Of a DNA stretch of 64,000 bases, positions 43,736 to 54,468 are shown piece after piece. The stretch's first letter is position 1. Each line of letters begins with the position of its first letter. Made by a program: the position numbers and the translations under genes. The DNA lies in IMG/VR virus record IMGVR_UViG_3300042868_005134, positions 310,001 through 374,000 of that record; one strand, given 5' to 3'. The notes under the pieces are model-generated. The model did no database searches. It worked only from the letters and a program-made list of their open reading frames with translations, and had not been told where the DNA came from.

Positions 43736-45151
43736 TTACAGCTTGTAACGATCACTCATTACAGTCTTAAGCATGATGCCTTCTGGAGTGAACTGATCCA
43801 AGTCAGCGGCTAGCAAGCTAGTCATTATACTTGGGCTGAATCCACTTACCAATGCGGCACCACTCTTGTCAGCCTTAACAGGCACGTTGTCTGAACTGTT
43901 TAGGTTCCAGAAAACAACTTGTGGCATGCTGTAGCCTGCGGCTTCGAACTTGCGTTCGATCATTTCCATTGCGCTGTCGTCGTGCTTGGCGCATTGGTCA
44001 AACTGCATGTCACTCAAGATCAGCAACATGGCTGGCATGTCGCTGGCTGGTACTGAACCCTTAACCGCTACGTCTAGAATCTTGTTCATAGCCGCGTTTA
44101 GGTTAGTGCTCATGTCCCAATCACTCTTGCTCATTTGAGCAACCTTGTCAACAATGTTACCCTTTAGAGTAACAAGTTCTGGCTTGCTAGAGAAAGTCAA
44201 GAAAGTGTCCTTGAACACACCCTTGTTCTTGTCTGCTAGGTACAGGCCCAAGCTGATTGAAACATCCATACAAGTCACATTAGTGTTCTTTCCTGCTGGG
44301 CAAGACATAGAACCGCTAACGTCTACGATTGGCATGATGCTGGCATCTCCCACATAGTTTGGCAAAGCATCCCACTGTGCCACGATGTGGTCAGTGGCTG
44401 TCTTGTCCAAAATTGCACGGTTGTAGCTTCCGATAACACCCTTCAACACGTCATGTGGGAAGATTGCGCTGGCGTTAACCTTGACAGTCTTGTCACCACT
44501 TACCAACTTGGCCACATACTCAGCGAATGCTGGTGTGTGACGGCTGAATGCCTTCTTGTAGTTGCGTGAAGCAACACTTGGCACGTGACTGAAGTTGATG
44601 TTGTCCCAGTCGTTGGCACACATTTGTGTTTCCACAACTGTGGTCATTCCCACTAAACTCTTACGATACTGCTTTGGAGTCATTCCAAAGAATGCTCGTA
44701 CTTCAGCCGCAATCTTGCCCTTACGAGGAGTCCACTTTGCGGCCAGACCGTTACGGGCACGTAGGGCATCGCCCAACATGGTATAAGCGGCTGACTTCAA
44801 GTCAGGGTTAGTGAAGACAAAGATGTCATCCCAACGGCCAACTTCAGGGATCTTGCGTAGCAAAGCCAAAGCGGCGTCTGGGTCACGCTTTTCTAGATGT
44901 ACTAGAATGTCGCGGAACAATTGACGTTCACCTGCACCACCACGGACATCACGTGCCCATTGTGCGATGCGTAGTGCTACGTCACTGTTTTCTACATAAG
45001 CGGCAGTGAAGTCGCCTACAATGTTCTTACCACGGCTTGCGCCGATCTTGTAGAACAGGTCCACAGTGGCCTTGGCTGTGCTCTTACGTGCCTTCATGCC
45101 ATTGGCAGTACGGGCTTCTTGGTTTGCTATTGCTGTTACAAATGCGTTCAT
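43736..45151 (-). CDS. TROVE/Ro60-like RNA-binding protein with vWA domain (DUF2828-type)
   Basis: ARDVRGGAGER, GRWDD, AAKWTPR helical region; MIDAS DVSGSMS; STN; ILSDMQFD; VFWNL; LVSGFS. Confidence 0.8.
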   Translation of the reverse strand: MNAFVTAIANQEARTANGMKARKSTAKATVDLFYKIGASRGKNIVGDFTAAYVENSDVALRIAQWARDVRGGAGERQLFRDILVHLEKRDPDAALALLRKIPEVGRWDDIFVFTNPDLKSAAYTMLGDALRARNGLAAKWTPRKGKIAAEVRAFFGMTPKQYRKSLVGMTTVVETQMCANDWDNINFSHVPSVASRNYKKAFSRHTPAFAEYVAKLVSGDKTVKVNASAIFPHDVLKGVIGSYNRAILDKTATDHIVAQWDALPNYVGDASIMPIVDVSGSMSCPAGKNTNVTCMDVSISLGLYLADKNKGVFKDTFLTFSSKPELVTLKGNIVDKVAQMSKSDWDMSTNLNAAMNKILDVAVKGSVPASDMPAMLLILSDMQFDQCAKHDDSAMEMIERKFEAAGYSMPQVVFWNLNSSDNVPVKADKSGAALVSGFSPSIMTSLLAADLDQFTPEGIMLKTVMSDRYKL

Positions 45152-45162
45152 TTTATTACCTC

Positions 45163-45220
45163 ACAGAATGTGTTTTTTTTCGATATGCGTGAAAATTTAA
45201 AGTTGCTGTTAACATTCTAA
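45163..45220 (-). ncRNA. Family-1 element, copy 0 (in the 5' UTR of the TROVE-like gene)
   Basis: AGAATGT-TAACAGCAA...ACATTCT-GT, abutting the GAGGT RBS. Confidence 0.7.
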
Positions 45221-45226
45221 AACTTT

Positions 45227-45472
45227 AACAGGATGATCGTGCCAATTTGTTTAGTATTCTGGTCTGACCAATTACGGCACTCAGACCCTATCAACATTCA
45301 TGTTGACTATTCACACTCGGCTTTCTGTAGTGAACACATAGTATGTCTTTCCATACTGTCGTCTATTCCATCTGCGTACATGGTATTTCACATGTATAAA
45401 CTTTTCAGTCCACCCTTACGGGGCACATTCTATAGCATTAAGCGTTAGTTTAAATTGCTGTAGTCATCCAAA
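45227..45472 (-). ncRNA. Family-1 Y-like RNA, copy 1 (about 240 nt, multi-hairpin)
   Basis: GGATGA-CTACAGCAA...TCATCC-TGTT enclosing at least 5 hairpins. Confidence 0.7.
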
Positions 45473-45475
45473 TAT

Positions 45476-45650
45476 AACAGGATCGTTTTCTACTTTTTGT
45501 TTTTATCGAGGAGACTTATCGAAACTCCTCTATCTTCACTGTCCTTGCTTGCGCATTGTCTTTAACCTTCAAAGCCCCGAAAGGCTCCAGCTAATAACAG
45601 GGTAAGTGAAGCAATCCATAGTAATATGTAGTTGCTGTACCGATCCTAAA
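45476..45650 (-). ncRNA. Family-1 Y-like RNA, copy 2 (about 170 nt)
   Basis: AGGATCG-GTACAGCAA...CGATCCT-GTT; internal CTTCACT/AGTGAAG and GAGGAG/CTCCTC stems. Confidence 0.7.
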
Positions 45651-45684
45651 ACTGTCCACAAGCATTATTGCTTGCTATGTGACT

Positions 45685-45713
45685 ATTATAACAGTATTGC
45701 GCTGTCTTGTCAC
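45685..45713 (-). promoter_or_regulatory. sigma70-type promoter for family-1 copies 2, 1, 0 and the TROVE-like gene
   Basis: GTGACA-17 nt-TATAAT. Confidence 0.65.
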
Positions 45714-45744
45714 TACATTTTGGCTAAACTGCTAAAATATAAAT

Positions 45745-45821
45745 TGGTCGGAGTACAAGGATTCGAACCTTGGACCCCCTGGTCCCAAACCAGGTGCGCT
45801 ACCAGACTGCGCTACACTCCG
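45745..45821 (-). tRNA. tRNA-Pro(TGG)
   Basis: Cloverleaf; loop TT-TGG-GA; CCA. Confidence 0.95.
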
Positions 45822-45823
45822 AA

Positions 45824-45976
45824 TTAACTTGCTACAATATGCGGTATATATGGAACTGCTCTTGGACCACCATACAGTTGCTCGAAAAGTTTTTTAGCCT
45901 CTTGCGGTGTATCCGCATAGATACGTTTCTTTTCTTCACCTTGAGGTGTTCTTACAGTTGCTTCATACATTGGCAT
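45824..45976 (-). CDS. Hypothetical protein (50 aa)
   Basis: AAGGA RBS; MPMYEATVRTPQG... Confidence 0.55.
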   Translation of the reverse strand: MPMYEATVRTPQGEEKKRIYADTPQEAKKLFEQLYGGPRAVPYIPHIVAS

Positions 45977-45990
45977 ATTGTATCCTTAAA

Positions 45991-46066
45991 TGGTACCTGG
46001 TGTCAGACTCGAACTGACATCGTTCTCCGTGTAAAGGAGATGCATAACCTCTCTGCGCAACCAGGC
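45991..46066 (-). tRNA. tRNA-Val(TAC)
   Basis: TCTCC-TTTACAC-GGAGA; CCA. Confidence 0.9.
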
Positions 46067-46075
46067 ATTAAATTT

Positions 46076-46149
46076 TGGAGCGGGATGGGAGAATCGAACT
46101 CCCGACATTAGATTGGAAATCTAAGGTAATGCCATTTTACGAATCCCGC
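46076..46149 (-). tRNA. tRNA-Gly(TCC)
   Basis: TTAGA-TTTCCAA-TCTAA; CCA. Confidence 0.92.
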
Positions 46150-46488
46150 ACACTTTATAGGTGCTCTCTGTGGCGCTTGAATCCACGGCAGCCCTTCTCT
46201 TCATGGCCGGTCCTTGCTTTGGTCGACGTTGGCAAGTTTCTCGGTGTTCCATTGTAGCTACTCAGAAAGCACGTATAAAGTGTCCGGCTACTCACACCAC
46301 ATGAGCCCCGGACTGAGCAGTTACTCTGTCCATAACATTTTCTTCTTCTGGAAAGGCTGTTAATCCTCACCCTAGGCAGTTTCCAGTATCCCTTAAATGG
46401 GGACTGTGAGGTCAGGTCCTAGTGTACCCTCTGGTCTATCGTTACAGAGACGCTATTTCGTTACGTAGAAATAGTAAGACGGGTTTTT

Positions 46489-46610
46489 AACAGGATAGGC
46501 TTTGCCTTATTTTTTATTTAAAACTTGACAAAGCGAACAAGTTCGTCCGGGTCGCCCCAGACCTTTGATACGGTTATTCACCGTTAGTGGTTTGCTGTCT
46601 CTATCCTAAA
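46489..46610 (-). ncRNA. Family-1 Y-like RNA, copy 3
   Basis: AGGATAG-AGACAGCAAA...CTATCCT-GTT with internal hairpins. Confidence 0.7.
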
Positions 46611-46612
46611 AC

Positions 46613-46687
46613 TGGTGCCCAATGTCTGATTCGAACAGACGACCTACCGCTTACAAGGCGGTTGCTCTACCCCTGAGCCAATCGGGC
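46613..46687 (-). tRNA. tRNA-Thr(TGT)
   Basis: ACCGC-CTTGTAA-GCGGT; CCA. Confidence 0.95.
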
Positions 46688-46693
46688 TATATG

Positions 46694-46876
46694 TTACTTA
46701 TTTGTTGCTGTCTGTATATTATAATTGATTTGACTTTGTTTGTCAAGTCTTTCAAATTCTTCATCTTCAAGTTTGGCTTCTTCTAGACGCCTAGGATCAG
46801 GCTTTCGAAAAATAGTATCATAATTCGAACCAAATGCTTTCAAATCTGTTGGACGTTGTTTACTGCCCTTACTCAT
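46694..46876 (-). CDS. Hypothetical protein
   Basis: AGGAG RBS; MSKGSKQRP...NYDTIF. Confidence 0.55.
   Translation of the reverse strand: MSKGSKQRPTDLKAFGSNYDTIFRKPDPRRLEEAKLEDEEFERLDKQSQINYNIQTATNK
46718..46746 (-). promoter_or_regulatory. Consensus sigma70 promoter
   Basis: TTGACA-17 nt-TATAAT. Confidence 0.8.
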
Positions 46877-46895
46877 AATAAACTCCTACTATTCT

Positions 46896-46971
46896 TGGTG
46901 GAGGTGACAAGGATCGAACTTGCTACATCCTGCTTGCAAAGCAGGCGCTCTCCCAAATGAGCTACACCCCC
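46896..46971 (-). tRNA. tRNA-Ala(TGC)
   Basis: G3:U70; CCTGC-TTTGCAA-GCAGG; CCA. Confidence 0.95.
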
Positions 46972-46977
46972 AAATAT

Positions 46978-47053
46978 TGGCTCCACAGCCTGGGCTCGAA
47001 CCAGGGACCAATTGATTAACAGTCAACTACTCTACCAACTGAGCTACTGCGGA
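46978..47053 (-). tRNA. tRNA-Asn(GTT)
   Basis: GTTGA-CTGTTAA-TCAAT; CCA. Confidence 0.95.
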
Positions 47054-47060
47054 ATAATTC

Positions 47061-47282
47061 TTAAACTTGAGTACTTGCTGTACCCGTATCATTTGTTTGG
47101 TAATTTGCGGCACCCTGTGGACGCTTGTTATCTCGCGGTTCACGTTTTGGAACAATGGCAGCGGCTAATTCTGCTTGGATCATTGCTCTCTTAAATTCGT
47201 TACGCTCATGTGCGTCAACGATAGTACACATGAATCTTTTTGACTGCTTACTGAGCTTGAATGTCTTGTTTGGTTTTAACAT
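47061..47282 (-). CDS. Hypothetical protein
   Basis: AAGGT RBS; MLKPNKTFKLSK... Confidence 0.6.
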   Translation of the reverse strand: MLKPNKTFKLSKQSKRFMCTIVDAHERNEFKRAMIQAELAAAIVPKREPRDNKRPQGAANYQTNDTGTASTQV

Positions 47283-47302
47283 AATTACCTTTTTAAAAAA
47301 CT

Positions 47303-47392
47303 TGGCGGAACGACTGAGACTCGAACTCAGAACCCGGATTACGCCGAGCGACAGATTAGCAATCTGCTCTAATACCATTATAGGACCGTTCC
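47303..47392 (-). tRNA. tRNA-Ser(GCT)
   Basis: GCAGA-TTGCTAA-TCTGT; long variable arm; CCA. Confidence 0.9.
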
Positions 47393-47402
47393 ATATATAC
47401 TA

Positions 47403-47512
47403 TGTAGCTGGGAGGCTTCGAACCTCCATGGAATCCTGGATTATATCCTGACCCGTCCCCTGACCTATGCTATGAGCATAGCGGGAGCTTTGCCTATTTG
47501 CTTACAGCTACA
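47403..47512 (-). ncRNA. tRNA-like RNA with extended CAT anticodon arm, no CCA
   Basis: GTAGCTG/CAGCTAC acceptor; GGAGG-TTCGAAG-CCTCC T-arm; CTATG-CTCATAG-CATAG stacked on an extra CCCG/CGGG helix. Confidence 0.65.
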
Positions 47513-47517
47513 CAGTA

Positions 47518-47546
47518 ATTATACAATCTAGCTGTGAGTATGTCAA
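47518..47546 (-). promoter_or_regulatory. Consensus sigma70 promoter
   Basis: TTGACA-17 nt-TATAAT; predicted start coincides with the 5' end of the tRNA-like RNA. Confidence 0.8.
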
Positions 47547-47552
47547 GTGTTT

Positions 47553-47627
47553 TGGCGGGTCTTGAGAGGATCGAACTCCCACCCTCGGTTTCGAAGACCG
47601 AGATGATATCCATTTCACCAAAGACCC
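47553..47627 (-). tRNA. tRNA-Arg(TCG)
   Basis: TCGGT-CTTCGAA-ACCGA; CCA. Confidence 0.88.
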
Positions 47628-47631
47628 TAAC

Positions 47632-47706
47632 TGGCCTCGCCACCCGGAATCGAACCAGGATCTACTCTTTAGGAGAGAGTGGTTCTATCCATTGAACTAT
47701 GGCGAG
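47632..47706 (-). tRNA. tRNA-Arg(CCT)
   Basis: ACTCT-CTCCTAA-AGAGT; CCA. Confidence 0.92.
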
Positions 47707-47714
47707 ATATAAAT

Positions 47715-47806
47715 TGGTACCAGCGGAGGGAATCGAACCCTCTCAAGAACGCTAATCTGGCGCTAAAAGGCTTATAAGACCTCTCTGACTTCCAAGTCTC
47801 GCTGGC
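47715..47806 (-). tRNA. Atypical tRNA, anticodon TAT (Ile by anticodon)
   Basis: Short D-arm GACT-TGGA-AGTC; loop CT-TAT-AA; long variable arm; CCA. Confidence 0.7.
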
Positions 47807-47817
47807 ATAAAAATGAA

Positions 47818-48036
47818 TTTGTTAAAGATGTTCCACCACATTATAGGAACCATTCACCCGAATTAACAAGCTCGAGCGGGATTCGGTAAGTTACTTGGAA
47901 TACTTGTCCAGCTTGCAACCGATCTGCCCGCGGACACTACGTGCCCGGGTGGGAGTCGAACCCATTACCTTCTACTATATCAGTCCTTCGAAGAAACCTA
48001 GATAGCGTGACTTTCTCTTGCTAACACTCTAACAAA
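47818..48036 (-). ncRNA. Structured RNA with internal T-arm and loop-closed stem
   Basis: Terminal TTTGTTAGAG-TGTT/AACA-TCTTTAACAAA pairing; TGGG-TTCGACT-CCCA followed by CGGGCAC-GTA-GTGTCCG. Confidence 0.5.
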
Positions 48037-48039
48037 ACT

Positions 48040-48113
48040 TGGAGCGGGATAGGAGAATCGAACTCCTGACTAAACCTTGGCAAGGTTTCGTTTGACCATT
48101 AAACTAATCCCGC
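48040..48113 (-). tRNA. tRNA-Gly(GCC)
   Basis: AAACC-TTGCCAA-GGTTT; CCA. Confidence 0.93.
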
Positions 48114-48120
48114 ATTATAT

Positions 48121-48197: not shown

Positions 48198-48203
48198 TTA
48201 ATT

Positions 48204-48934: not shown

Positions 48935-49019
48935 TGGTGGAGATTACTGGGATCGAACCAGTCGTGCCCGAAGGCGGCGGATTTACAGTCCACTGCATCA
49001 CCATTGATGCTTCATCTCC
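48935..49019 (-). tRNA. tRNA-Tyr(GTA)
   Basis: GTGGA-CTGTAAA-TCCGC; variable arm; CCA. Confidence 0.9.
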
Positions 49020-49020
49020 A

Positions 49021-49260: not shown

Positions 49261-50679
49261 TTATTTTAAATTATATTCTAAATAATTCTTAAAAAATTCT
49301 TTATTTTTTTCAGCAAGTAACTTATAGTCTAGGTCTTGTTTGTTTGTATTCATTATTTCAGAAAACTCAAAACCCGCACTCGCATGTTCTCCCAAACGCC
49401 AAGACGTTGGCTTACCAATATGGTCCATTATAGAATTTAGTGACTTAGAAAATTCTGTTACTGTTTTTGCGTCCCAGTAATCGTTTTCCCAAAACTCTGT
49501 CTGTAATGGTTTCATAAATCTGTAACCGTACTGGCTATAGTTCTCATCAAACTTACTTTTGTAGGCCGAAGCTGGATCTCTAGATATCCCTAATGGATTA
49601 AATCTCCAATCATACATTTCATTGTCCAAACACCACTGATGAGTAGCGTATAAATCTTCTCTAGTTTCACCAGTTAGCCCAGCAATAAAACTCAATTCAA
49701 ATGTTATTTCGTCTTTCCATGTTTGCTTTAATGTTTGTAAAAATTCTTTTCCGTGTACGCCATTCCAACCTTTACCTACAATTTTACAAGCATCCTTATG
49801 AAAACTTTCAATTCCAAAGTATGCGCTTTTGAGTCCTGAGTCTTTTAATTGCTGTATTGAACCTGGTCGAGATCCTATCAAATCTAATCGATTGTAGCCA
49901 ATCCATTCTAACTTAAATGGTAAATTTTGTACTATTTCAGTTATAGCTTCCATTTTTTCCTGACTCTCGTTAACTGTATCATCAATGAAAAAATATCTAG
50001 TTGTACCAAACGTTTCGTAATTGTACATAAGTTCTTCCTTAACCAAGGAATAATCTCTTAGATAAGTATTTTTCTTTTTACCTAGATTAGGATATCTGCA
50101 AAATGAACAAGAAAACTGACAGCCCCGACCTAATTCAATTGGCAACACTTCGTACGATTGAACAAAGTCATCTTTCACAAAAGCAGGACTAAGTGTTTTA
50201 ATATCAAAAGGTGTCCGCGTTAACGATACATTAGATTCCTGATCTAGAAATTTTAATAAATCATTCTCAGCATTTCCGTGCAGCTTAATCCAATCTAAAT
50301 AGCAATTTTTTGCGTATGAATTAGAGCCTCCTAAAATCCATTTTAACTGAGGGAACTTATTTTCAAGTAGTGGCCTCGAGTTTAAAATCCATTCGGGTTC
50401 GCTCACTACCATAGATAGTCTGCCAGTCGTTGTTGCTTTGCGTAATGCCCCGTCGTGCCAAAATGTAGAACTTACACCTATGCCTATAGTTGTAGAGTCT
50501 ACAAATTTCGAAGTTACTTCAACTAATTCATTAGTAGTAAATTTCTGACAAAAGTCTATTACTTTAACAGTATAGCCATGTCTCCTTAACCATGCGGCTA
50601 ATTGATACGGACCCAGTGGTCTCGTATGTCCCGATTTATCTGGTAGATAAATCGAATTCCAAATTATAAAATGTGCCAT
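49261..50679 (-). CDS. B12-binding-domain radical SAM protein
   Basis: RPLGPYQLAAWLRRHG N-terminus; ELGRGCQFSCSFC; FIDDT; GIES. Confidence 0.88.
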   Translation of the reverse strand: MAHFIIWNSIYLPDKSGHTRPLGPYQLAAWLRRHGYTVKVIDFCQKFTTNELVEVTSKFVDSTTIGIGVSSTFWHDGALRKATTTGRLSMVVSEPEWILNSRPLLENKFPQLKWILGGSNSYAKNCYLDWIKLHGNAENDLLKFLDQESNVSLTRTPFDIKTLSPAFVKDDFVQSYEVLPIELGRGCQFSCSFCRYPNLGKKKNTYLRDYSLVKEELMYNYETFGTTRYFFIDDTVNESQEKMEAITEIVQNLPFKLEWIGYNRLDLIGSRPGSIQQLKDSGLKSAYFGIESFHKDACKIVGKGWNGVHGKEFLQTLKQTWKDEITFELSFIAGLTGETREDLYATHQWCLDNEMYDWRFNPLGISRDPASAYKSKFDENYSQYGYRFMKPLQTEFWENDYWDAKTVTEFSKSLNSIMDHIGKPTSWRLGEHASAGFEFSEIMNTNKQDLDYKLLAEKNKEFFKNYLEYNLK

Positions 50680-50712
50680 GAGATATTTATTGTACTATCG
50701 ATCTCATGAAAA

Positions 50713-51378
50713 TTAACTAATATGTAGGACAGGAATAGTTACTTTCGGTTTTGCTGGATATTTTAAATCTGGTTTTGTATGATGAATCCGTCTGTTTCTA
50801 TTAATATCTTTATAACCAACTCCTAAAATTATCATAGGCTGTCCCTGGATATTTAACACTGTCTGAAGACCGGCTATATCAAAGCATCCGCAATAACCTG
50901 TTGAGTATCCTAATTGATGTGCTAATAGATTCAAGTATCCACTAGCTATACCTATGGACATGTGAATGTCGATTAACATACGTTTCTTTGCCGTATCCGA
51001 CACTAAGCCTGCTGGATGTCTAAACTCTTCAAAGTACGTATTCAAATACGGCCTGTCTGAATTAGCTGTAAGTATATCTGCTAGTGTTAACTGTTCGAAT
51101 ACTACTAACATGTTTGCCAATGTTTGTGAATTATTTTCTATGCTCATTGAGGGTGGAAAATCGAAACCACTTGTATTGTTGTAAACTTGTTCTATTACAG
51201 TCCGATTAGTAATAAAATGGCATCGATAAAATGCAGCATTTTGTTTACTGGGGCATTGGGTTACTGCTTCAACTAATAAGTCGATATCTTCTTGCGGAAT
51301 TGATCGTGTTAAATCCCAATTTCGTTGGCAATGTTGACTTTTTTGAATAGTAATTTTTACTGCTGATTTATCGATCAT
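50713..51378 (-). CDS. Nitroreductase family protein
   Basis: QRNW...IP...CPSKQN; IGIASG...LGYSTGYCG; GVGY. Confidence 0.8.
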   Translation of the reverse strand: MIDKSAVKITIQKSQHCQRNWDLTRSIPQEDIDLLVEAVTQCPSKQNAAFYRCHFITNRTVIEQVYNNTSGFDFPPSMSIENNSQTLANMLVVFEQLTLADILTANSDRPYLNTYFEEFRHPAGLVSDTAKKRMLIDIHMSIGIASGYLNLLAHQLGYSTGYCGCFDIAGLQTVLNIQGQPMIILGVGYKDINRNRRIHHTKPDLKYPAKPKVTIPVLHIS

Positions 51379-51411
51379 AATTTCTCTTTAGTTAAAAAAT
51401 TATTTATCGTT

Positions 51412-51485
51412 TGGTGCTCCTAGGAAGGATCGAACTTCCAATTACACTATACCAAAGTGTCGGTATTCCATTTACCTATAAGAGC
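51412..51485 (-). tRNA. tRNA-Thr(GGT)
   Basis: ACACT-TTGGTAT-AGTGT; CCA. Confidence 0.9.
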
Positions 51486-51487
51486 GT

Positions 51488-51562
51488 TGGTACCGCTTAG
51501 TGGAATCGAACCACTATTCACACTTTAGAAGAATGTTGTCCTATCCATTGAACGAAAGCGGT
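51488..51562 (-). tRNA. tRNA-Arg(TCT)
   Basis: ACATT-CTTCTAA-AGTGT; CCA. Confidence 0.9.
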
Positions 51563-51569
51563 AAAATTT

Positions 51570-51645
51570 TGGCAGGGGAGATGAGATTCGAACTCATGAT
51601 GACGATTTCAAAGACCGTTGCCTTAGGCCACTAGGCGACACCCCA
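51570..51645 (-). tRNA. tRNA-Gln(TTG)
   Basis: ACGGT-CTTTGAA-ATCGT; CCA. Confidence 0.88.
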
Positions 51646-51653
51646 ACAAATAA

Positions 51654-51776
51654 AACAGGATACGTTTTTTACGAAGGGCATGGAGCCCTTTGCTCAACCG
51701 CTGAGCGAATCTGCCATAAGGCAAATGTTGGAATCGAACCAACGTGTCATAAATGACTTTGCTGTGCGTATCCTTA
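51654..51776 (-). ncRNA. Family-1 copy 4: YrlA-like circularly permuted tRNA mimic
   Basis: AGGATACG/CGTATCCT helix + ACAGCAAA enclosing T-arm, loop-closed acceptor stem, D-arm and anticodon-like arm, in that order. Confidence 0.8.
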
Positions 51777-51779
51777 ACT

Positions 51780-51899
51780 TGGTGTCGTTGCTGGGATTCG
51801 AACCCAGATCTCTTCCTTTAGAGTGGAATTTTGATTGTGCTGACTGTATCCTTAACAGGATAACCTTTTATAAGCGTCCTACCATTAGACGACAACGAC
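51780..51899 (-). ncRNA. Family-1 copy 5: 120 nt tRNA-like RNA with internal family-1 helix and CTA loop
   Basis: GTCGTTG/CAACGAC-ACCA; D- and T-arms; insertion TATCCT-GTTA-AGGATA-CAGTCAGCA; TTCC-ACTCTAAA-GGAA. Confidence 0.7.
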
Positions 51900-51904
51900 A
51901 TGAC

Positions 51905-51981
51905 TGGTACCCCTAGGCAGATTCGAACCGCCATCCAGCAGATTTTAAGTCTACCCGCACTACCAATTAGCGTACAGGGGC
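51905..51981 (-). tRNA. tRNA-Leu(TAA), short variable loop
   Basis: GTAGA-CTTAAAA-TCTGC; CCA. Confidence 0.88.
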
Positions 51982-52158
51982 ATAAATATTTTTGTGAAAA
52001 CTTACGATCACTTAACACCGCAAGGATTACAGTTTCACCTTTGTTTGTACCAAGGTGTGTGCTGTGTTATGGTACACGATATATACGACAACACCTACTT
52101 CGAATTACAATACTTCACTGACGTTAACAAAGCACTTCGCTTTGTCAACAATTTATAA

Positions 52159-52235
52159 TGGTACCCCTTGTCTGATTCGAACAGACAGCCAACTCCTTTT
52201 GAGAGAATCCGCACTACCAATTAGCGTAAAGGGGC
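52159..52235 (-). tRNA. tRNA-Leu(CAA), short variable loop
   Basis: Loop CT-CAA-AA; CCA. Confidence 0.88.
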
Positions 52236-52238
52236 ATA

Positions 52239-52315
52239 TGGTACCTTCGGGCGGGTTCGAACCCCCAACCAACAGTTTCTAAAACTATCCGCACTCCCAA
52301 TTAGCGTACGAAGGC
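52239..52315 (-). tRNA. tRNA-Leu(TAG), short variable loop
   Basis: Loop TT-TAG-AA; CCA. Confidence 0.85.
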
Positions 52316-52326
52316 ATTTAAATTTT

Positions 52327-52401
52327 TGGTAGTCGATGCTGGGTTCGAACCAGCGACCTACACGATGTCAACGTGGTGCTCTACCACTGAGCTAATCGAC
52401 T
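52327..52401 (-). tRNA. tRNA-Val(GAC)
   Basis: Loop TT-GAC-AT; CCA. Confidence 0.92.
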
Positions 52402-52402
52402 A

Positions 52403-52477
52403 TGGTACCCTTGGACAGTTTCGAAATGTCGACCCTCGCCTTATCAAGACGATGCTCTTCCTCTGAGCTACAAGGGC
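52403..52477 (-). tRNA. tRNA-Ile(GAT)
   Basis: TCGTC-TTGATAA-GGCGA; CCA. Confidence 0.9.
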
Positions 52478-52491
52478 ATAAACTACTTAGG

Positions 52492-52562
52492 GGTGACTAT
52501 CGGGGCTCGAACCCGAACTACCAGAGTCACAGTCTAGGTTGCTACCATTACAACATAGCCAC
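52492..52562 (-). tRNA. tRNA-His(GTG), no encoded CCA or G-1
   Basis: CTAGA-CTGTGAC-TCTGG; C73. Confidence 0.85.
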
Positions 52563-52574
52563 ACCTAAATAGTC

Positions 52575-52648
52575 TGGTCCTCTCGACAAGAATCGAACTT
52601 GTAATGGCCGGTTATCAGCCGACTGTTATACCATTTAACTACAAGAGG
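52575..52648 (-). tRNA. tRNA-Ile(GAT)
   Basis: GTCGG-CTGATAA-CCGGC; CCA. Confidence 0.88.
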
Positions 52649-52654
52649 AATAAA

Positions 52655-52720
52655 AACAGGATAGCATTTTTTGGCTTTTTTTACAGAAAAGATTTTTTTG
52701 ATTTGCTGTTGCTATCCTAA
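52655..52720 (-). ncRNA. Family-1 copy 6: mini RNA with GTA (Tyr) anticodon stem-loop
   Basis: AGGATAGCA/TGCTATCCT; ACAGCAAA; CTTTT-CTGTAAA-AAAAG. Confidence 0.75.
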
Positions 52721-52722
52721 AC

Positions 52723-52812
52723 TGGCAGTGAGTAAGGGATTCGAACCCTTGGGCCCCTAGCGGAGCCGACAGTTTAGCAAACTATTGGGTTAAGCCACTC
52801 CCCCAACTCACT
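52723..52812 (-). tRNA. tRNA-Ser(GCT)
   Basis: ATAGT-TTGCTAA-ACTGT; variable arm; CCA. Confidence 0.9.
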
Positions 52813-52974
52813 ATATAGGTTTTCCCGGCGACCAACTATCTTTCTTAAGGACTCGCTGGCTTGTCTCGTGTGAAAGAGTTTATACAGACCTTGTACAATT
52901 CTACTGGCGTGTCATGCTCAAGAAATAGGGCACTAGAATACAAGGGACTCATCTCAACGTCTAGCTGGGAAACT

Positions 52975-53066
52975 TGGCGGAAGACGGAGGAGTCGAACCC
53001 CATCCCATTTCTGAGAACCCAGTTTTCAAGGCTGGTCGGCGCACCAACGCACCTGCATCATCTTCC
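52975..53066 (-). tRNA. tRNA-Ser(TGA), 8/4-type cloverleaf
   Basis: 8 bp acceptor GGAAGATG/CGTCTTCC; 4 bp T-stem; 6 bp D-stem; loop CT-TGA-AA; CCA. Confidence 0.8.
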
Positions 53067-53072
53067 ATAACT

Positions 53073-53147
53073 TGGTGCTCCCTCACGGACTCGAACCGCA
53101 ATAACCGGACTACAAAACCGGTATAATAGCCTTTATATTAAAGGAGC
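53073..53147 (-). tRNA. tRNA-Thr(TGT)
   Basis: Loop TT-TGT-AG; CCA. Confidence 0.85.
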
Positions 53148-53152
53148 AAATT

Positions 53153-53227
53153 TGGCGCCCACATATGGAATCGAACCACAATCCCCGGTTTCGTAAACCA
53201 GTATATTATCCATTATACTATGCGGGC
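53153..53227 (-). tRNA. tRNA-Arg(ACG)
   Basis: CTGGT-TTACGAA-ACCGG; CCA. Confidence 0.9.
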
Positions 53228-53232
53228 AAATT

Positions 53233-53307
53233 TGGTGGTAATAGTAGGATTTGAACCTACACCTTGCTCCGTATGAAGGAGGTGCACTACCGTTATGCTA
53301 TATTACC
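53233..53307 (-). tRNA. tRNA with CAT anticodon (Met or Ile2)
   Basis: Loop TT-CAT-AC; CCA. Confidence 0.85.
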
Positions 53308-53308
53308 A

Positions 53309-53402
53309 TATAGAAACACACTAGAGTTTTACGATAAACTACGCTCCTGAGTTTCTGCCCAAGAGCTCATAGGTCTGCCTATGTTTCTAATGTGTTTTTA
53401 TA
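53309..53402 (-). ncRNA. Family-2 long-stem element with three inner hairpins
   Basis: TATAAAAACACATTAGA/TCTAGTGTGTTTCTATA; CATAGG/CCTATG; GCTCTTGGG/CTCAGGAGC; AGTTT/AAACT. Confidence 0.55.
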
Positions 53403-53477
53403 TGGTAGGGGCACAGGGAATCGAACCCTGATAGACCGGTTAAAAGCCGGATATTCTAGCCGTTGAATTATACCCCC
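53403..53477 (-). tRNA. tRNA-Lys(TTT)
   Basis: Loop CT-TTT-AA; CCA. Confidence 0.9.
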
Positions 53478-53480
53478 ATA

Positions 53481-53556
53481 TGGTCCACAGCGTCAGATTC
53501 GAACTGACACCTCATCGGTTAAGAGCCGAGTACGCTACCGTTAACGCCAGCTGTGG
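53481..53556 (-). tRNA. tRNA-Lys(CTT)
   Basis: Loop CT-CTT-AA; CCA. Confidence 0.88.
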
Positions 53557-53641
53557 ATGGATCGTAAATATTTTCTTTTACGTGCCATCCAGGACCATAC
53601 GGGATCCGGGATGACACTACAGTTTACCTGTACGTTTCATG

Positions 53642-53770
53642 TCATTCTCCTTTGTTGATATTTCTCTTTTGTGCTTGGCGTTCTGATTTCCAGAACACTC
53701 GTTTCCAATCTTTCAAATGCTTCCACCATTGTGGAGGCGCAGTTAGGTTACCTTTTTTGACATTTGCCAT
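53642..53770 (-). CDS. Small basic Trp-rich protein (42 aa)
   Basis: AAGGA RBS; MANVKKGNLTAPPQWWKHLKDWKRVFWKSER... Confidence 0.55.
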   Translation of the reverse strand: MANVKKGNLTAPPQWWKHLKDWKRVFWKSERQAQKRNINKGE

Positions 53771-53786
53771 AGGATTTCCTTTATAA

Positions 53787-53846
53787 AACAGGATGCTTAT
53801 TTTTCAATTAAAAGTTGAATTTTTGAATTTGCTGTTCGCATCCTAA
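53787..53846 (-). ncRNA. Family-1 copy 7: mini RNA with TTT (Lys) anticodon stem-loop
   Basis: AGGATGC/GCATCCT; ACAGCAAA; TTCAA-CTTTTAA-TTGAA. Confidence 0.75.
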
Positions 53847-53848
53847 AA

Positions 53849-53924
53849 TGGTACACCCTGTTGGAATCGAACCAACTTCAACGGCTCTTCAGACCGCCGC
53901 TATGACCACATCAGCTAAAGGTGC
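53849..53924 (-). tRNA. tRNA-Phe(GAA)
   Basis: GCGGT-CTGAAGA-GCCGT; CCA. Confidence 0.88.
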
Positions 53925-53932
53925 ATTATACT

Positions 53933-54008
53933 TGGTCTCCCTACCAGGATTCGAACCTGGACCACACGGCCCCAAACCGTGTACGCAACCTGATAACGCT
54001 TTAGAGAG
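53933..54008 (-). tRNA. tRNA-Pro(TGG)
   Basis: CACGG-TTTGGGG-CCGTG; CCA. Confidence 0.88.
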
Positions 54009-54015
54009 ATAAAAT

Positions 54016-54090
54016 TGGTGGAGGCCGAGGGAATCGAACCCTTCTAGTCACGATGCTTGCAAGGCAACGCCGTAGCCCACTACTGCCCCC
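54016..54090 (-). tRNA. tRNA-Ala(TGC), reduced D-arm
   Basis: G3:U70; GTAG-TGGG-CTAC; loop CT-TGC-AA; CCA. Confidence 0.8.
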
Positions 54091-54160
54091 AATTACAAAG
54101 CATACTATTCTAACTCGTCAAAAGAGTCTGCGTTATACGTCTTTAGTATACTTTGTAATT
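54091..54160 (-). ncRNA. Family-2 long-stem element
   Basis: AATTACAAAGTATACTA/TAGTATGCTTTGTAATT; inner GACTC-TTTTGAC-GAGTT. Confidence 0.5.
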
Positions 54161-54237
54161 GGCTGTCCGACTAGGGATCGAACCTAGCTCATTCTTCGTT
54201 AACAGCGAAGCGCCTACACCATGCTTGCTCTCGGACA
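54160..54237 (-). tRNA. tRNA-Asn(GTT)
   Basis: CTTCG-CTGTTAA-CGAAG; CCA. Confidence 0.85.
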
Positions 54238-54244
54238 ATAAAAT

Positions 54245-54320
54245 TGGCGCCATGGACGGGACTCGAACCCGCCTGGTACGGATAGACAATCCGCTGCCCT
54301 ACCCCGAGGACTACCATGGC
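54245..54320 (-). tRNA. tRNA-Asp(GTC)
   Basis: GCGGA-TTGTCTA-TCCGT; CCA. Confidence 0.88.
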
Positions 54321-54324
54321 ATGT

Positions 54325-54399
54325 TGGTATCGCGTACGGGGATCGAACCCGCCTGAGTAAGTTGAAAGCCTACGGACCTCACCAGAAGTCAAACGCGAT
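54325..54399 (-). tRNA. tRNA-Glu(TTC)
   Basis: GTAGG-CTTTCAA-CTTAC; CCA. Confidence 0.85.
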
Positions 54400-54406
54400 G
54401 TAATAA

Positions 54407-54468
54407 AACAGGATAGCATCTTTTTTCCATTAAAAGTGAAATTAGAATTTTTGCTGTTGCTATCCTAA
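54407..54468 (-). ncRNA. Family-1 copy 8: mini RNA with TTT (Lys) anticodon stem-loop
   Basis: AGGATAGCA/TGCTATCCT; ACAGCAAA; TTTCA-CTTTTAA-TGGAA. Confidence 0.75.

What the first reader, a model, noticed from the sequence alone, without database searches (positions are those of the whole stretch)
43736..54468. Ro60/TROVE-like (DUF2828-type) protein with a nine-member family of Y-like RNAs sharing a covarying handle
Seen: nine minus-strand elements (45163, 45227, 45476, 46489, 51654, 51780, 52655, 53787, 54407). They share a terminal helix with compensatory changes (AGGATAG/CTATCCT, AGGATCG/CGATCCT, AGGATAC/GTATCCT, AGGATGC/GCATCCT, GGATGA/TCATCC, AGAATGT/ACATTCT), an unpaired (A)CAGCA(A) just after the 5' strand, and GT(T) after the 3' strand. 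The enclosed cargo varies from about 35 to 220 nt. Three copies sit in tandem under one promoter directly upstream of the TROVE/vWA gene. Established: Ro60/Rsr binds a terminal helix of Y RNAs, whose other end is an effector module, often tRNA-like. Inference: this is a modular RNP system with one protein, one handle and many cargos. The handle does not resemble the canonical Ro-binding GGUCCGA/UUGAC helix, so it may be a new RNA class and may assign a function to DUF2828.
Basis: partly seen in the sequence, partly recalled or inferred. Interest (0 to 1): 0.9.

Follow-up and report, generated by a model that had tools for sequence, protein, structure and literature searches.

The report
Phage Ro60-like protein's handle-tagged small RNAs
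A phage tRNA-gene cluster carries a family of small RNA genes sharing one conserved "handle"; the same handle sits beside the same Ro60-like protein gene (DUF2828) in very different phages, so it is probably that protein's unrecognised RNA partner.

Summary

- **Window elements.** Eight minus-strand elements lie between 45165 and 54466. A ninth is a closed-hairpin variant inside a tRNA-like gene.
- **Shared module.** Each has a 7-bp Watson-Crick terminal helix, NN-ACAGCAA after the 5' strand, an A-rich run before the 3' strand, and an unpaired G after it.
- **Other phages.** The same module, with different but complementary helix letters, lies on the gene strand beside DUF2828/DUF7788 genes in 11 of 12 lineages examined. 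These include T4-like phages, Felixounavirus, a cyanophage and a mycobacteriophage, plus Listeria, Staphylococcus, Enterococcus, Bacillus and Campylobacter phages.
- **Genome loci.** It is found in at least 49 of 80 diverse DUF2828 loci from genome assemblies.
- **Reverse test.** Searching IMG/VR with the RNA motif alone, 74 of 113 stretches hold the gene, 73 on the same strand, at a median distance of 76 nt.
- **Controls.** The T4 and T5 tRNA arrays lack it, and no Rfam family matches.
- **Protein.** Its AlphaFold model matches only a phage Ro60 structure over its full length (TM 0.52), although no TROVE HMM hits.
- **Cargo.** Some cargos are circularly permuted tRNA-like modules, as in YrlA.

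Best reading: a new, widespread family of Y-RNA-like partners of a divergent phage Ro60-like protein. Binding and function are untested.

The parts
54410..54466 (-). Short handle RNA (57 nt): AGGATAG(CA)-ACAGCAA ... (TG)CTATCCT, then G
   Evidence: covariance model R1, 57.3 bits, E 3e-10
53790..53844 (-). Short handle RNA (55 nt): AGGATGC / GCATCCT. It starts 4 nt after tRNA-Phe.
   Evidence: (63 bits)
52658..52718 (-). Short handle RNA (61 nt): AGGATAG / CTATCCT. It lies between tRNA-Ser and tRNA-Ile.
   Evidence: (55.9 bits)
51780..51897 (-). tRNA-like RNA with ordinary acceptor ends, D arm, T arm and a CCA end. The handle module is present as a closed hairpin (TATCCT-GTTA-AGGATA) followed by CAGCACA. 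It is a circular permutation of the design of the next element.
   Evidence: Homologues in L013, L043, L077 and L078 have covarying acceptor stems, GTTA or GACA loops, and then ACAGCAA.
51657..51774 (-). Handle RNA (118 nt) with circularly permuted tRNA-like cargo. Order: hairpin, T arm, acceptor-like stem closed by a TTAT loop, D arm, anticodon-like arm. Handle AGGATAC / GTATCCT.
   Evidence: 30.4 bits; RNAalifold recovers handle, T arm and D arm with compensatory changes
46492..46607 (-). Handle RNA (116 nt) with a cargo of three to four hairpins, one a 7-bp stem with a GCGA loop. Handle AGGATAG / CTATCCT.
   Evidence: 27.8 bits
45479..45647 (-). Handle RNA (169 nt), first of the tandem trio. 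Handle AGGATCG / CGATCCT.
45229..45470 (-). Handle RNA (242 nt), second of the trio. The helix is 6 bp, GGATGA / TCATCC.
45165..45218 (-). Short handle element (54 nt) forming the mRNA leader. Its 3' strand ACATTCT ends 2 nt before the GAGG Shine-Dalgarno sequence and 13 nt before the ATG of the DUF2828 gene.
   Evidence: 54.4 bits. The same leader position is conserved in related loci.
45685..45713 (-). Sigma-70-type promoter match (GTGACA-17-TATAAT with an extended TG) in front of the tandem trio and the gene
43736..45151 (-). Gene for the DUF2828 + DUF7788 (vWA-like) protein, 471 aa, with a predicted Ro60-like fold
43699..43722 (-). Intrinsic-terminator-like hairpin with a T run, closing the transcription unit
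39251..43602 (-). Possible accessory genes just downstream: AAA ATPase (42502-43602), DSP/PTP-type phosphatase (40970-41437), metallophosphoesterase (39721-40323) and P-loop kinase AAA_33 (39251-39712). Together they look like an RNA end-healing set.
   Evidence: Their link to the ribonucleoprotein (RNP) is inference only.

Best explanation
**What it is.** The elements are genes for small non-coding RNAs, plus one mRNA leader, that all carry the same protein-docking module. The module has four parts:
- a 7-bp, almost purely Watson-Crick helix;
- on the cargo side, an asymmetric internal loop with 5'-NN-ACAGCAA on one strand and an A-rich run on the other;
- at the far end of the helix, an unpaired G when the ends are open, or a G-N-N-A loop when the helix is closed;
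- a cargo that is free to vary.

**Proposed partner.** The module is the binding site of the co-encoded DUF2828/DUF7788 protein. That protein is predicted to be a Ro60-like helical-repeat ring with a vWA domain.

**Cargo types.**
- A small A/U-rich hairpin, comparable to YrlB.
- A circularly permuted tRNA-like body (T arm, closed acceptor-like stem, D arm), comparable to YrlA.
- Larger folds of unknown kind.

**Proposed working.** By analogy with Ro60-Y RNA particles, the RNAs would gate the protein or tether it to other factors such as tRNA-handling, RNA-repair or RNA-decay enzymes. This would happen during infection, in a context of phage tRNA supply and counter-defence. The copy in the mRNA leader abuts the ribosome-binding site, and in KVP40 it overlaps the start codon, so it probably gives feedback control of translation.

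**Shown.** The family exists, is strand-specific, has a covarying helix and invariant single-stranded letters, and is tightly linked to the gene across distant phages. The protein's predicted fold is Ro60-like, and some cargos are tRNA-like.

**Inferred.** Transcription into discrete RNAs, binding by the protein, autoregulation and the biological role.
For: **1. Motif beyond chance, and strand-specific.**
- Window pattern counts exceed shuffles.
- An anchor test that does not assume pairing was run on the window and five known phage regions. There were 33 anchors on the gene strand against 3 on the opposite strand. A perfect 7-bp partner was found for 22 of 33, against 8% for shuffled stems.
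- Across 12 DUF2828 lineages and the T4 control region, 43 of 73 ACAGCAA sites on the gene strand have a partner, against 12% for shuffled stems. On the opposite strand it is 1 of 12.

**2. Covariation.** Pairing is 100% in alignment A3 (13 short elements from the window and four known phages), 99.7% in A4 (132 hits in related IMG/VR loci) and 100% in A7 (23 hits in independent genome loci). Five to six of the 7 pairs change on both sides. Pairing collapses to 32-49% when the 3' partner is slid by 1-3 columns.

**3. Invariant letters.** CAGCA is present in 39 of 39 curated elements and the 3' G in 39 of 39. An A-rich run lies at positions -12 to -2 before the 3' strand.

**4. Linkage to the gene.**
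- Elements are found on the gene strand within 8-9 kb of the DUF2828 gene, in several lineages directly adjacent, in KVP40, cyanophage BUCT-ZZ01, Felixounavirus HK3 and Cronobacter S13. They are also found in Listeria LP-125, Campylobacter F375, mycobacteriophage Lumos, Staphylococcus S-CoN_Ph4, Enterococcus VRE9_1 and Bacillus PJN02.
- The Staphylococcus and Mycobacterium phages have no tRNA array at the locus.
- In genome assemblies, 46 of 80 diverse loci have at least one strict element on the gene strand, against 3 on the opposite strand. Of 100 elements in loci where the gene's 5' end is matched, 69 end within 400 nt upstream of the gene. Three more loci are added by the covariance model.
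- Reverse test from the motif alone in IMG/VR: 74 of 113 stretches hold the gene, 73 on the same strand, median distance 76 nt. Only 2 of the 39 gene-less stretches have more than 4 kb of sequence on both sides of the element.
- The T4 tRNA region and the first 50 kb of T5, which hold its whole tRNA array and no DUF2828 gene, have none.

**5. Protein.**
- Pfam DUF2828 + DUF7788.
- AlphaFold2 model with pLDDT 78 and pTM 0.76.
- The only PDB hit with E<=0.001 is the Ro60 of Thermus phage phiLo, chain 9l5y_B, E 4e-6, TM 0.52/0.53 over the full length.
- The DxSxS metal-site motif of vWA domains is invariant.
- An independent preprint reports that the Felixounavirus Bas63 protein gp130, encoded directly upstream of that phage's tRNA genes, is structurally similar to Ro60. 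Its authors guessed at undiscovered Y RNAs (PMC11482910).

**6. tRNA-like cargo.** It has T and D arms with compensatory changes, which is the architecture described for YrlA (PMC4201824).

**7. Closed-hairpin form.** The module is conserved inside a tRNA-like RNA. It therefore works as an internal binding module and is not merely an end-processing site.

**8. Leader copies.** One abuts the Shine-Dalgarno sequence in the window. Others overlap the ATG in KVP40 and in locus L190.

**9. Neighbouring RNA-repair genes.** Examples are RtcB and an RNA ligase in LP-125, an RNA ligase in fHe-Yen9-04, and phosphoesterases or a kinase in the window and other phages.
Against: - No expression or binding data were available, so discrete RNA ends are unproven.
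- The protein has no TROVE HMM hit even at E<=10. Its profile reaches the phiLo Ro60 sequence only at E 0.13. A TM-score of 0.52 is moderate.
- Bas63 gp130 alone, expressed from a plasmid or from T7, counters the ppl defence. At least one activity of the protein therefore does not need the phage's RNAs.
- The helices contain almost no G-U pairs. Wobble pairing therefore cannot be used to prove an RNA-level rather than a DNA-level structure, and the argument rests on strand bias.
- Some DUF2828 loci show no recognisable element. Examples are Yersinia phage fHe-Yen9-04 within 8 kb and about 40% of genome loci under strict criteria. Akkermansia-type loci carry other repeats.
Confidence: 0.65

Rival explanations
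1. The RNAs are substrates rather than cofactors. The handle marks RNAs to be cut and rejoined, for example circularised or un-permuted into tRNA-like molecules, by repair enzymes such as an RtcB-type ligase. The DUF2828 protein would act as the platform.
For: - The same tRNA-like body exists in both circular permutations side by side, at 51897-51780 and 51774-51657. The closed hairpin reads like the joined ends of an open element.
- In Cronobacter S13 the loop closing the acceptor-like stem contains ACCA.
- RtcB, RNA ligase and phosphoesterase genes lie nearby in several phages.
Against: - Most elements carry only a tiny hairpin with nothing to mature.
- Many loci have no ligase nearby.
- The permutation can be explained by tandem duplication at the DNA level.
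Confidence: 0.12
2. The helix with ACAGCAA is only a processing or cis-regulatory signal, such as an RNase site that punctuates polycistronic tRNA transcripts or a leader that controls the downstream gene. There would be no stable RNP.
For: - Elements are spaced 4-11 nt from neighbouring tRNAs, exactly like tRNAs, and the helix is 7 bp like an acceptor stem.
- One copy is always in the mRNA leader in this lineage.
- Some leader copies overlap the start codon.
Against: - The motif follows the DUF2828 gene even where there is no tRNA array, as in the Staphylococcus and Mycobacterium phages.
- Copies lie downstream of the gene or kilobases away.
- The tRNA arrays of T4 and T5 lack it.
- The closed internal version has no ends to process.
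- Invariant single-stranded letters together with a freely covarying helix are typical of a protein-binding site.
Confidence: 0.12
3. The elements are protein-independent decoy or counter-defence RNAs, for example tRNA-like baits for host anticodon nucleases or RNases. They would merely be co-inherited with the DUF2828 gene.
For: - Some cargos are tRNA-like.
- The elements lie in tRNA arrays, which are thought to counter tRNA-targeting defences (own knowledge).
- gp130 works without the phage's RNAs against ppl.
Against: - The only part conserved across phyla is the handle, not the cargo.
- The median distance to the gene is 76 nt on the same strand.
- Outer helix letters are more alike within a genome than between genomes, 0.81 and 0.94 against 0.56. 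That pattern is expected if a genome-specific partner reads them.
Confidence: 0.06
4. The elements are DNA-level features: inverted-repeat mobile elements, recombination sites or integron-attC-like sites.
For: - They have terminal inverted repeats with variable content.
- The helices have almost no G-U pairs.
Against: - Strand polarity relative to transcription is absolute, 132 of 132 and 23 of 23 hits on the gene strand.
- Inner helix pairs differ between copies within one genome while staying complementary.
- No transposase or integrase is associated.
- There are no target-site duplications.
- The asymmetric ACAGCAA has no mirror copy.
Confidence: 0.02

Closest known systems
Bacterial and phage Ro60 (Rsr) with YrlA/YrlB Y RNAs (Chen et al. 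2014, PMC4201824)
   Same: - The RNA genes lie next to, and on the same strand as, a ring plus vWA protein gene.
- The 5' and 3' ends form a helix with a short conserved motif near the 5' end.
- One RNA class carries a tRNA-like module (T arm, closed acceptor-like stem, D arm) and another is short.
- RNA-repair genes are often nearby.
   Different: - The protein belongs to Pfam DUF2828/DUF7788, not TROVE.
- The RNA motif is NN-ACAGCAA with an A-rich strand and a 3' G, not GNCGAAG or the bulged GGUCCGA helix.
- There is no Rfam match.
- A locus can hold up to nine copies (the window), often embedded in tRNA arrays, with very varied cargo. A closed-hairpin version exists inside a tRNA-like RNA.
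Thermus phage phiLo Ro60 with Yrl1/Yrl2 (PMC12135203; PDB 9KOP and 9L5Y)
   Same: - It is the best and only significant structural match of the model.
- It is phage-encoded, with its RNAs just upstream of the gene and binding shown by EMSA and cryo-EM.
   Different: - phiLo Ro60 is a TROVE-domain protein, and its RNAs carry the CGAA motif.
- Sequence relation to the window protein is marginal, E 0.13.
Bas63 (Felixounavirus) gp130, which counters the ppl defence (PhageMaP preprint, PMC11482910)
   Same: - It is probably the same protein family. This is inferred: Felixounavirus HK3 has the DUF2828 gene directly upstream of its tRNA genes, as described for g130.
- The authors noted Ro60-like structure and suspected hidden Y RNAs.
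   Different: - No RNA partner was identified there.
- Here four handle elements are located inside the Felixounavirus tRNA array, at L084 10719-11471.
Small stable RNAs in the tRNA clusters of T4 (rnaC, rnaD) and T5 (RNAI, RNAIII, RNA1 and others)
   Same: They are non-tRNA small RNAs, some tRNA-like, co-transcribed within phage tRNA arrays and of unknown function.
   Different: They lack the handle module. The covariance model and the pattern scans find nothing. No DUF2828 gene is annotated in the T4 tRNA region or found by tblastn in the first 50 kb of T5.
Circularly permuted tRNA genes of the red alga Cyanidioschyzon merolae (own knowledge)
   Same: The 3' half (T arm and 3' acceptor strand) precedes the 5' half (5' acceptor strand and D arm), and the outer ends pair.
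   Different: - No bulge-helix-bulge splice motif is present.
- Most relatives lack an anticodon arm.
- There is no evidence of circularisation.

Membership tests
Pfam DUF2828 (PF11443) / DUF7788 (PF25043) proteins | Match to both HMMs above the gathering score | tested here: met
   DUF7788 scores 167.5 bits and DUF2828 91.3 bits. phrog_850 'RNA-binding protein' hits at E 3e-142.
Ro60 / TROVE protein family | Sequence match to the TROVE domain | tested here: not met
   No TROVE hit at E<=10 for three family members. phmmer against PDB sequences finds nothing. The family profile reaches the phiLo TROVE protein only at E 0.13, in the vWA stretch.
Ro60 / TROVE protein family | Overall fold: N-terminal helical-repeat ring followed by a vWA domain with a metal-site motif | tested here: met
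   The AF2 model has pLDDT 78. Foldseek gives 9l5y_B (phage Ro60) at E 4e-6 and TM 0.52/0.53 over the full length, and all other hits cover the vWA domain only. The D-x-S-x-S motif is invariant. The TM-score is moderate, and ring closure was not inspected.
Ro60 / TROVE protein family | Binds Y RNA on the outer ring surface and threads single-stranded RNA ends through the central hole | not testable with these tools
   Needs biochemistry or an experimental structure.
Y RNAs (Y_RNA, YrlA, YrlB) | Match to the curated covariance models or the canonical Ro-binding motif (bulged GGUCCGA helix; GNCGAAG in YrlA) | tested here: not met
   No Rfam 15 family reaches even E<=10 on the elements apart from chance-level hits. 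The conserved motif is NN-ACAGCAA.
Y RNAs (Y_RNA, YrlA, YrlB) | Encoded beside the Ro60-type gene on the same strand | tested here: met
   The median distance is 76 nt, and 73 of 74 are on the same strand.
Y RNAs (Y_RNA, YrlA, YrlB) | The 5' and 3' ends pair into a conserved helix that carries the protein-binding site | tested here: inconclusive
   The terminal helix with covariation is shown. The true RNA ends and protein binding are not known.
Y RNAs (Y_RNA, YrlA, YrlB) | Effector module resembling tRNA (T arm, acceptor-like stem-loop, D arm), as in YrlA | tested here: met
   This holds for a subset: window 51774-51657 and its relatives, HK3 element 11347-11471 and S13 element 11154-11288. 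About 13% of long cargos have a canonical T arm.
tRNA | Cloverleaf with an anticodon arm, recognised by ARAGORN or Rfam RF00005 | tested here: not met
   None of the nine elements is called as a tRNA. Only isolated T-arm fragments score, at 14.6 bits.
T4 rnaC/rnaD and T5 stable RNAs | Sequence or structure similarity to those RNAs | tested here: not met
   R1 finds no hit at E<=1 in the T4 region (L083), and only one weak plus-strand hit (E 0.07) outside the tRNA array in T5 (L160). The pattern scans find no elements.
DNA inverted-repeat elements (MITE, attC, retron ends) | No fixed polarity relative to transcription; associated transposase, integrase or reverse transcriptase | tested here: not met
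   All covariance-model hits are on the gene strand. No such enzyme genes lie beside the loci.

The most novel reading that the evidence does not exclude
DUF2828/DUF7788 proteins form a very large family: 6211 clusters at 50% identity, also present in giant viruses. They would be a second, phage-centred branch of Ro60-like RNPs. Their partner RNAs are defined by a portable helix-ACAGCAA tag that can be attached to any cargo, including whole tRNA-like bodies in either circular permutation. The RNP would be a general phage device for protecting, repairing or repurposing RNA during infection, and for evading host defence. The tag would give a ready-made handle for finding its many unknown cargo RNAs.
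Probability: 0.5. Interest if true: 0.88.

Novelty: new variant of a known kind. Interest (0 to 1): 0.85.

Why it matters
- **A testable partner for a domain of unknown function.** DUF2828/DUF7788 is found in hundreds of cultured phages (706 records), including KVP40-like, FelixO1-like, Listeria P100-like and cluster L mycobacteriophages. It is also found in thousands of metagenomic clusters. This finding gives it a concrete RNA partner to test.
- **It explains previously unannotated sequence.** It accounts for part of the unannotated 'gaps' in phage tRNA arrays.
- **It supplies what one study lacked.** An experimental study of a Felixounavirus counter-defence protein suspected hidden Y RNAs but could not name them.
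- **It broadens the Ro60-Y RNA paradigm.** One protein would serve many cargos through a new recognition module.
- **The module is easy to search for.** It is short and well defined, so further cargo RNAs can be found, and EMSA or RIP experiments can be designed directly.

Tried and rejected
- **Source phage.** A megablast of the locus against 50,697 phage records found only tRNA-sized matches, so the source phage is not in that collection.
- **Literature.**
  - 'DUF2828' gives nothing relevant.
  - Searches for Ro-like phage RNAs gave only the papers cited.
  - AcrIIIA1, a Staphylococcus phage protein-RNA anti-CRISPR, looked promising but is an unrelated small protein.
  - The catalogue of 10,006 viral structured-RNA candidates makes no link to this protein.
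  - The Ro60 review and the supplements of Chen 2014 are not held.
- **Sequence search of PDB chains** with the single protein found nothing.
- **T4 rnaC/rnaD** were read by eye and scanned. They share no handle.
- **G-U versus A-C mismatch test** for RNA-level pairing was uninformative, because the helices are nearly all Watson-Crick.
- **A first RNAalifold run** mixed unrelated cargos and recovered only the handle. A homogeneous subset was needed.
- **A regular-expression count of D arms** was too strict to be useful.
- **Folding of the 342-nt gap** (46491-46150) and of the tRNA-like stretch before the first element gave unremarkable z-scores.
- **Considered and rejected:** integron attC sites, MITEs, retron a1/a2 repeats, intrinsic terminators and kink-turns. 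Each fails on polarity, associated genes or motif.

Full report
**1. Setting**

The window is about 41% G+C and has no close relative among 50,697 deposited phage genomes. It carries 38 ARAGORN-called tRNA genes, all on the minus strand between 45745 and 54320. Rfam confirms 33 of these and adds one more at 48938-49019.

The ORF at 43736-45151 (minus strand, 471 aa) matches Pfam DUF7788 (167 bits) and DUF2828 (91 bits). It also matches PHROG 850 'RNA-binding protein'. tblastn finds relatives in 706 phage records. They include KVP40-like vibriophages, Felixounaviruses and cluster L mycobacteriophages, plus Listeria, Staphylococcus, Enterococcus, Bacillus and Campylobacter phages. Their annotations are 'RNA-binding protein', 'Ro-like RNA binding protein' or 'hypothetical'. 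An exhaustive HMMER search finds 6211 clusters at 50% identity.

**2.

Reading the minus strand shows eight elements of the form:
- a 7-nt 5' strand, then NN, then ACAGCAA;
- a cargo;
- the 3' strand, then GTT.

They lie at 54466-54410, 53844-53790, 52718-52658, 51774-51657, 46607-46492, 45647-45479, 45470-45229 (6 bp) and 45218-45165. A mechanical scan recovers seven of them. The eighth, with its 6-bp helix, was confirmed by reading and by the motif search. Motif counts are far above shuffles.

The ninth 'member' (51897-51780) is a tRNA-like gene with ordinary acceptor ends, D arm, T arm and a CCA end. Its handle is closed into the hairpin TATCCT-GTTA-AGGATA, followed by CAGCACA.

The elements sit 4-11 nt from neighbouring tRNAs, the same spacing as between tRNAs.

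A promoter match at 45713-45685 precedes the tandem trio. A terminator-like hairpin at 43722-43699 follows the gene.

**3. The same module in distant phages**

Around the DUF2828 gene of other phages the module recurs on the gene strand with different helix letters.

| Phage | Helix 5' strands | Position relative to the gene |
|---|---|---|
| KVP40 | AGCAATC, AGACAAT, AGACATT | In the tRNA array upstream; a leader copy's 3' strand overlaps the ATG |
| Cyanophage BUCT-ZZ01 | TGGTAGG, AGGTTGC, AGAATTG | Tandem, upstream |
| Felixounavirus HK3 | AGACCAA and AGACCGT, four copies in all | Inside the tRNA array, downstream |
| Cronobacter S13 | AGGATTG, AGGATGC | One about 8 kb upstream, one about 750 nt downstream |
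| Listeria LP-125 | AGGAATC, AGAGAGC, AGGAAGC | Tandem, upstream |
| Campylobacter F375 | ATGGTAC, AGGGTAT | Tandem, upstream |
| Mycobacteriophage Lumos | TGGACAC, TGGACCC, TGGACGG | Tandem, downstream |
| Staphylococcus S-CoN_Ph4 | AAGACAC, AAGTCTC, AAAGGAC | Tandem, downstream |
| Enterococcus VRE9_1 | AAGAATC, AAGAACG, AAGAACC | Three within the tRNA array upstream, one directly upstream |
| Bacillus PJN02 | AAGGCAC, AAGACAC, TAGACAC | Four copies within 2.5 kb upstream |

The Staphylococcus and Mycobacterium loci have no tRNA array. Only Yersinia jumbo phage fHe-Yen9-04 showed none within 8 kb.

In 39 curated elements:
- CAGCA is invariant;
- the preceding base is A in 35 and the following base is A in 38;
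- the base after the 3' strand is G in all 39;
- positions -12 to -2 before the 3' strand are A-rich.

Lengths fall into a short class of 51-79 nt (25 elements) and a long class of 106-247 nt (14 elements).

**4. Statistics**

*Anchor tests that do not presuppose pairing*
- Using AG-N7-N-CAGCA[AT] as the anchor, on the window and five known phage regions, there are 33 sites on the gene strand against 3 on the opposite strand. A perfect 7-bp partner lies within 400 nt for 22 of 33, against 8% for shuffled stems.
- Using ACAGCAA alone across 12 DUF2828 lineages and the T4 control region, 43 of 73 gene-strand sites have a partner, against 12% for shuffled stems. On the opposite strand it is 1 of 12.

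*Covariance model R1.* It was built from 13 short elements with a 7-bp helix.
- It finds untrained long elements.
- It finds 132 hits in 59 related IMG/VR loci, all on the gene strand.
- It finds 23 hits in independent bacterial-genome loci, all on the gene strand.

*Pair counts.* Pairing is 100%, 99.7% and 100% in the three alignments. Five, five and six of the seven pairs change on both sides. Pairing drops to 32-49% when the 3' partner is slid by 1-3 columns. These alignments were selected by, or fitted to, the helix, so the anchor tests are the fairer measure.

**5. Linkage to the gene, tested in both directions**

*From the gene.* Eighty diverse DUF2828 loci from genome assemblies, 30-66% identical to the window protein and from many phyla, were scanned.
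- 46 have at least one strict element on the gene strand, 106 elements in all. Three loci have one on the opposite strand.
- 17% of anchors have partners, against 0.7% for shuffled stems.
- Of 100 elements in loci where the gene's 5' end is matched, 69 end within 400 nt upstream of the gene, usually as 1-6 tandem copies.
- The covariance model adds three more loci.
- Some of the remaining loci hold variants.

*From the motif.* The pattern AAGACAC-NN-ACAGCAA-N25-55-GTGTCTTG was searched in IMG/VR and gave at least 113 stretches.
- 74 contain a DUF2828 homologue, 73 of them on the same strand, at a median distance of 76 nt.
- Only 2 of the 39 stretches without the gene have more than 4 kb of sequence on both sides of the element.

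*Negative controls.* The T4 tRNA region and the first 50 kb of T5 have no elements. That T5 stretch holds the whole tRNA array and several annotated stable RNAs. tblastn finds no DUF2828 gene in it.

*Within-genome pattern.* The two outermost helix pairs are more alike within a locus (0.81 and 0.94) than between loci (0.56 and 0.56). Inner pair 6 is free in both comparisons (0.31 against 0.33). This pattern is expected if a genome-specific partner reads the outer pairs.

**6. The protein**

- AlphaFold2 with an 18-sequence alignment gives pLDDT 78 and pTM 0.76. The model is helical to about residue 260, followed by an alpha/beta domain.
- Against the PDB, the only hit with E<=0.001 is the Ro60 of Thermus phage phiLo (9l5y_B, E 3.9e-6, TM 0.52/0.53, full length). 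The next hits are vWA domains only.
- Against predicted viral structures, the best matches are DUF2828/DUF7788/vWA proteins of phages and giant viruses. A 'Ro-like RNA binding protein' of a Gordonia phage matches further down.
- By sequence the family is distinct from TROVE.
- The D-x-S-x-S metal-site motif is invariant.

**7. Cargo**

*tRNA-like cargo.* Ten elements align to give the handle, a 5-bp T arm with a TTCGANT loop and a 4-bp D arm with an AATGGTA-type loop, with compensatory changes. They come from the window at 51774-51657, its relatives, and HK3. By eye, a covarying acceptor-like stem closed by a TTAT or TTCAT loop lies between the two arms. The order T arm, closed acceptor-like stem, D arm inside a terminal helix is the YrlA design (PMC4201824). 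Only the window copy and one relative also keep an anticodon-like arm.

*Closed-handle tRNA-like RNA.* It is conserved in relatives with different acceptor stems and GTTA or GACA loops. The module therefore also works as an internal hairpin.

*Short elements.* They carry only an A/U-rich hairpin, comparable to YrlB.

*Long cargos.* Those at 45647-45479, 45470-45229 and 46607-46492 match no Rfam family.

**8. Mechanism proposed**

*Shown*
- A strand-specific, covarying RNA-type module with invariant single-stranded letters.
- Its linkage to the gene across phyla.
- The Ro60-like predicted fold.
- tRNA-like cargos.

*Inferred*
- The module is the docking site of the DUF2828 protein.
- The RNAs act like Y RNAs, as gates or tethers.
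- The leader copy lets the protein repress its own translation. It lies next to the Shine-Dalgarno sequence in the window and overlaps the ATG in KVP40 and L190.

*Context.* The setting suggests RNA repair or tRNA-centred counter-defence.
- The elements lie in tRNA arrays.
- RtcB and an RNA ligase are nearby in LP-125, and an RNA ligase in fHe-Yen9-04.
- Phosphoesterases are nearby in several phages.
- In the window a DSP phosphatase, a metallophosphoesterase and an AAA_33 kinase lie just downstream.
- The Felixounavirus homologue counters the ppl defence. It does so even without the phage's RNAs, which limits how far the RNAs can be said to be required.

**9. Novelty**

Rfam 15 has no matching family. 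No held paper describes these RNAs. The 2024 PhageMaP preprint only guessed that some tRNA genes might be Y RNAs. The kind of system, a Ro60-type RNP with Y RNAs, is known. New here are the protein branch, the recognition module, the multi-copy modular arrangement and the closed or permuted tRNA-like forms. I therefore rate it a new variant of a known kind, of high interest, with binding and function still to be shown.

Noticed in passing
window 39251-43602 (minus strand): Directly downstream of the DUF2828 gene lie an AAA ATPase, a DSP/PTP-type phosphatase, a calcineurin-like metallophosphoesterase and a P-loop kinase (AAA_33). Together they look like an RNA end-healing set with an ATPase partner for the vWA protein.
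   Followed up: partly
window 49261-51378 and 55530-57989 (minus strand): A radical-SAM protein (472 aa) and a nitroreductase-family protein sit in the middle of the tRNA array. A second radical-SAM protein, a class-I glutamine amidotransferase and a weak DUF455-like ORF lie just upstream of the array. They may act in nucleoside or tRNA modification.
   Followed up: no
window about 54556-54470 and about 53062-52972 (minus strand): Two tRNA-like sequences that ARAGORN and Rfam did not call. The first has an 8-bp acceptor stem, a T arm and an ACCA end. The second has a long variable arm and a GCCA end.
   Followed up: partly
window 46150-46491 (minus strand), plus other gaps of more than 150 nt in the array (53072-52813, 52158-51982, 48538-48278, 48039-47807, 47552-47393, 47302-47054, 46895-46688): These are unexplained spacers inside the tRNA array. 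The 342-nt spacer has no Rfam hit and an unremarkable fold z-score of -1.25. They may hold further small RNAs or small ORFs.
   Followed up: partly
window 55274, 49248, 47546, 46746 (minus strand): Four perfect TTGACA-17-TATAAT promoter matches divide the tRNA array into several transcription units.
   Followed up: no
L160 (phage T5) 30284-33949 and 40848-41566: T5 annotates eight 'stable RNAs with unknown functions', some tRNA-like, inside its tRNA array. They lack the handle module, so they are a separate unexplained RNA set.
   Followed up: partly
L198 (Akkermansia MAG) about 5580-6000: Upstream of its DUF2828 gene are three tandem repeats of about 150 nt with GC-rich hairpins, in place of ACAGCAA handles. 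This may be an alternative partner RNA type.
   Followed up: no
L081 (KVP40) 7965-8007 and L190 about 5975-6010: The leader handle's 3' strand includes the start codon of the DUF2828 gene, which suggests translational feedback.
   Followed up: partly
L081 2353-2565 and 4595-4841; window 45470-45229: The long cargos of KVP40 and the window share a hairpin followed by ATAGTCAA(C/T). This hints at a conserved long-cargo class of unknown function.
   Followed up: no
window 62485-63945 (minus strand): A 486-aa ORF matches the TctA tricarboxylate-transporter family strongly (305 bits), which is unusual for a phage region.
   Followed up: no
BFVD matches of the protein model: DUF2828/DUF7788-fold proteins also occur in giant viruses (Pithovirus, Marseillevirus, Mimiviridae, CroV) with TM 0.64-0.75. 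The family therefore spans phages and eukaryotic viruses.
   Followed up: no
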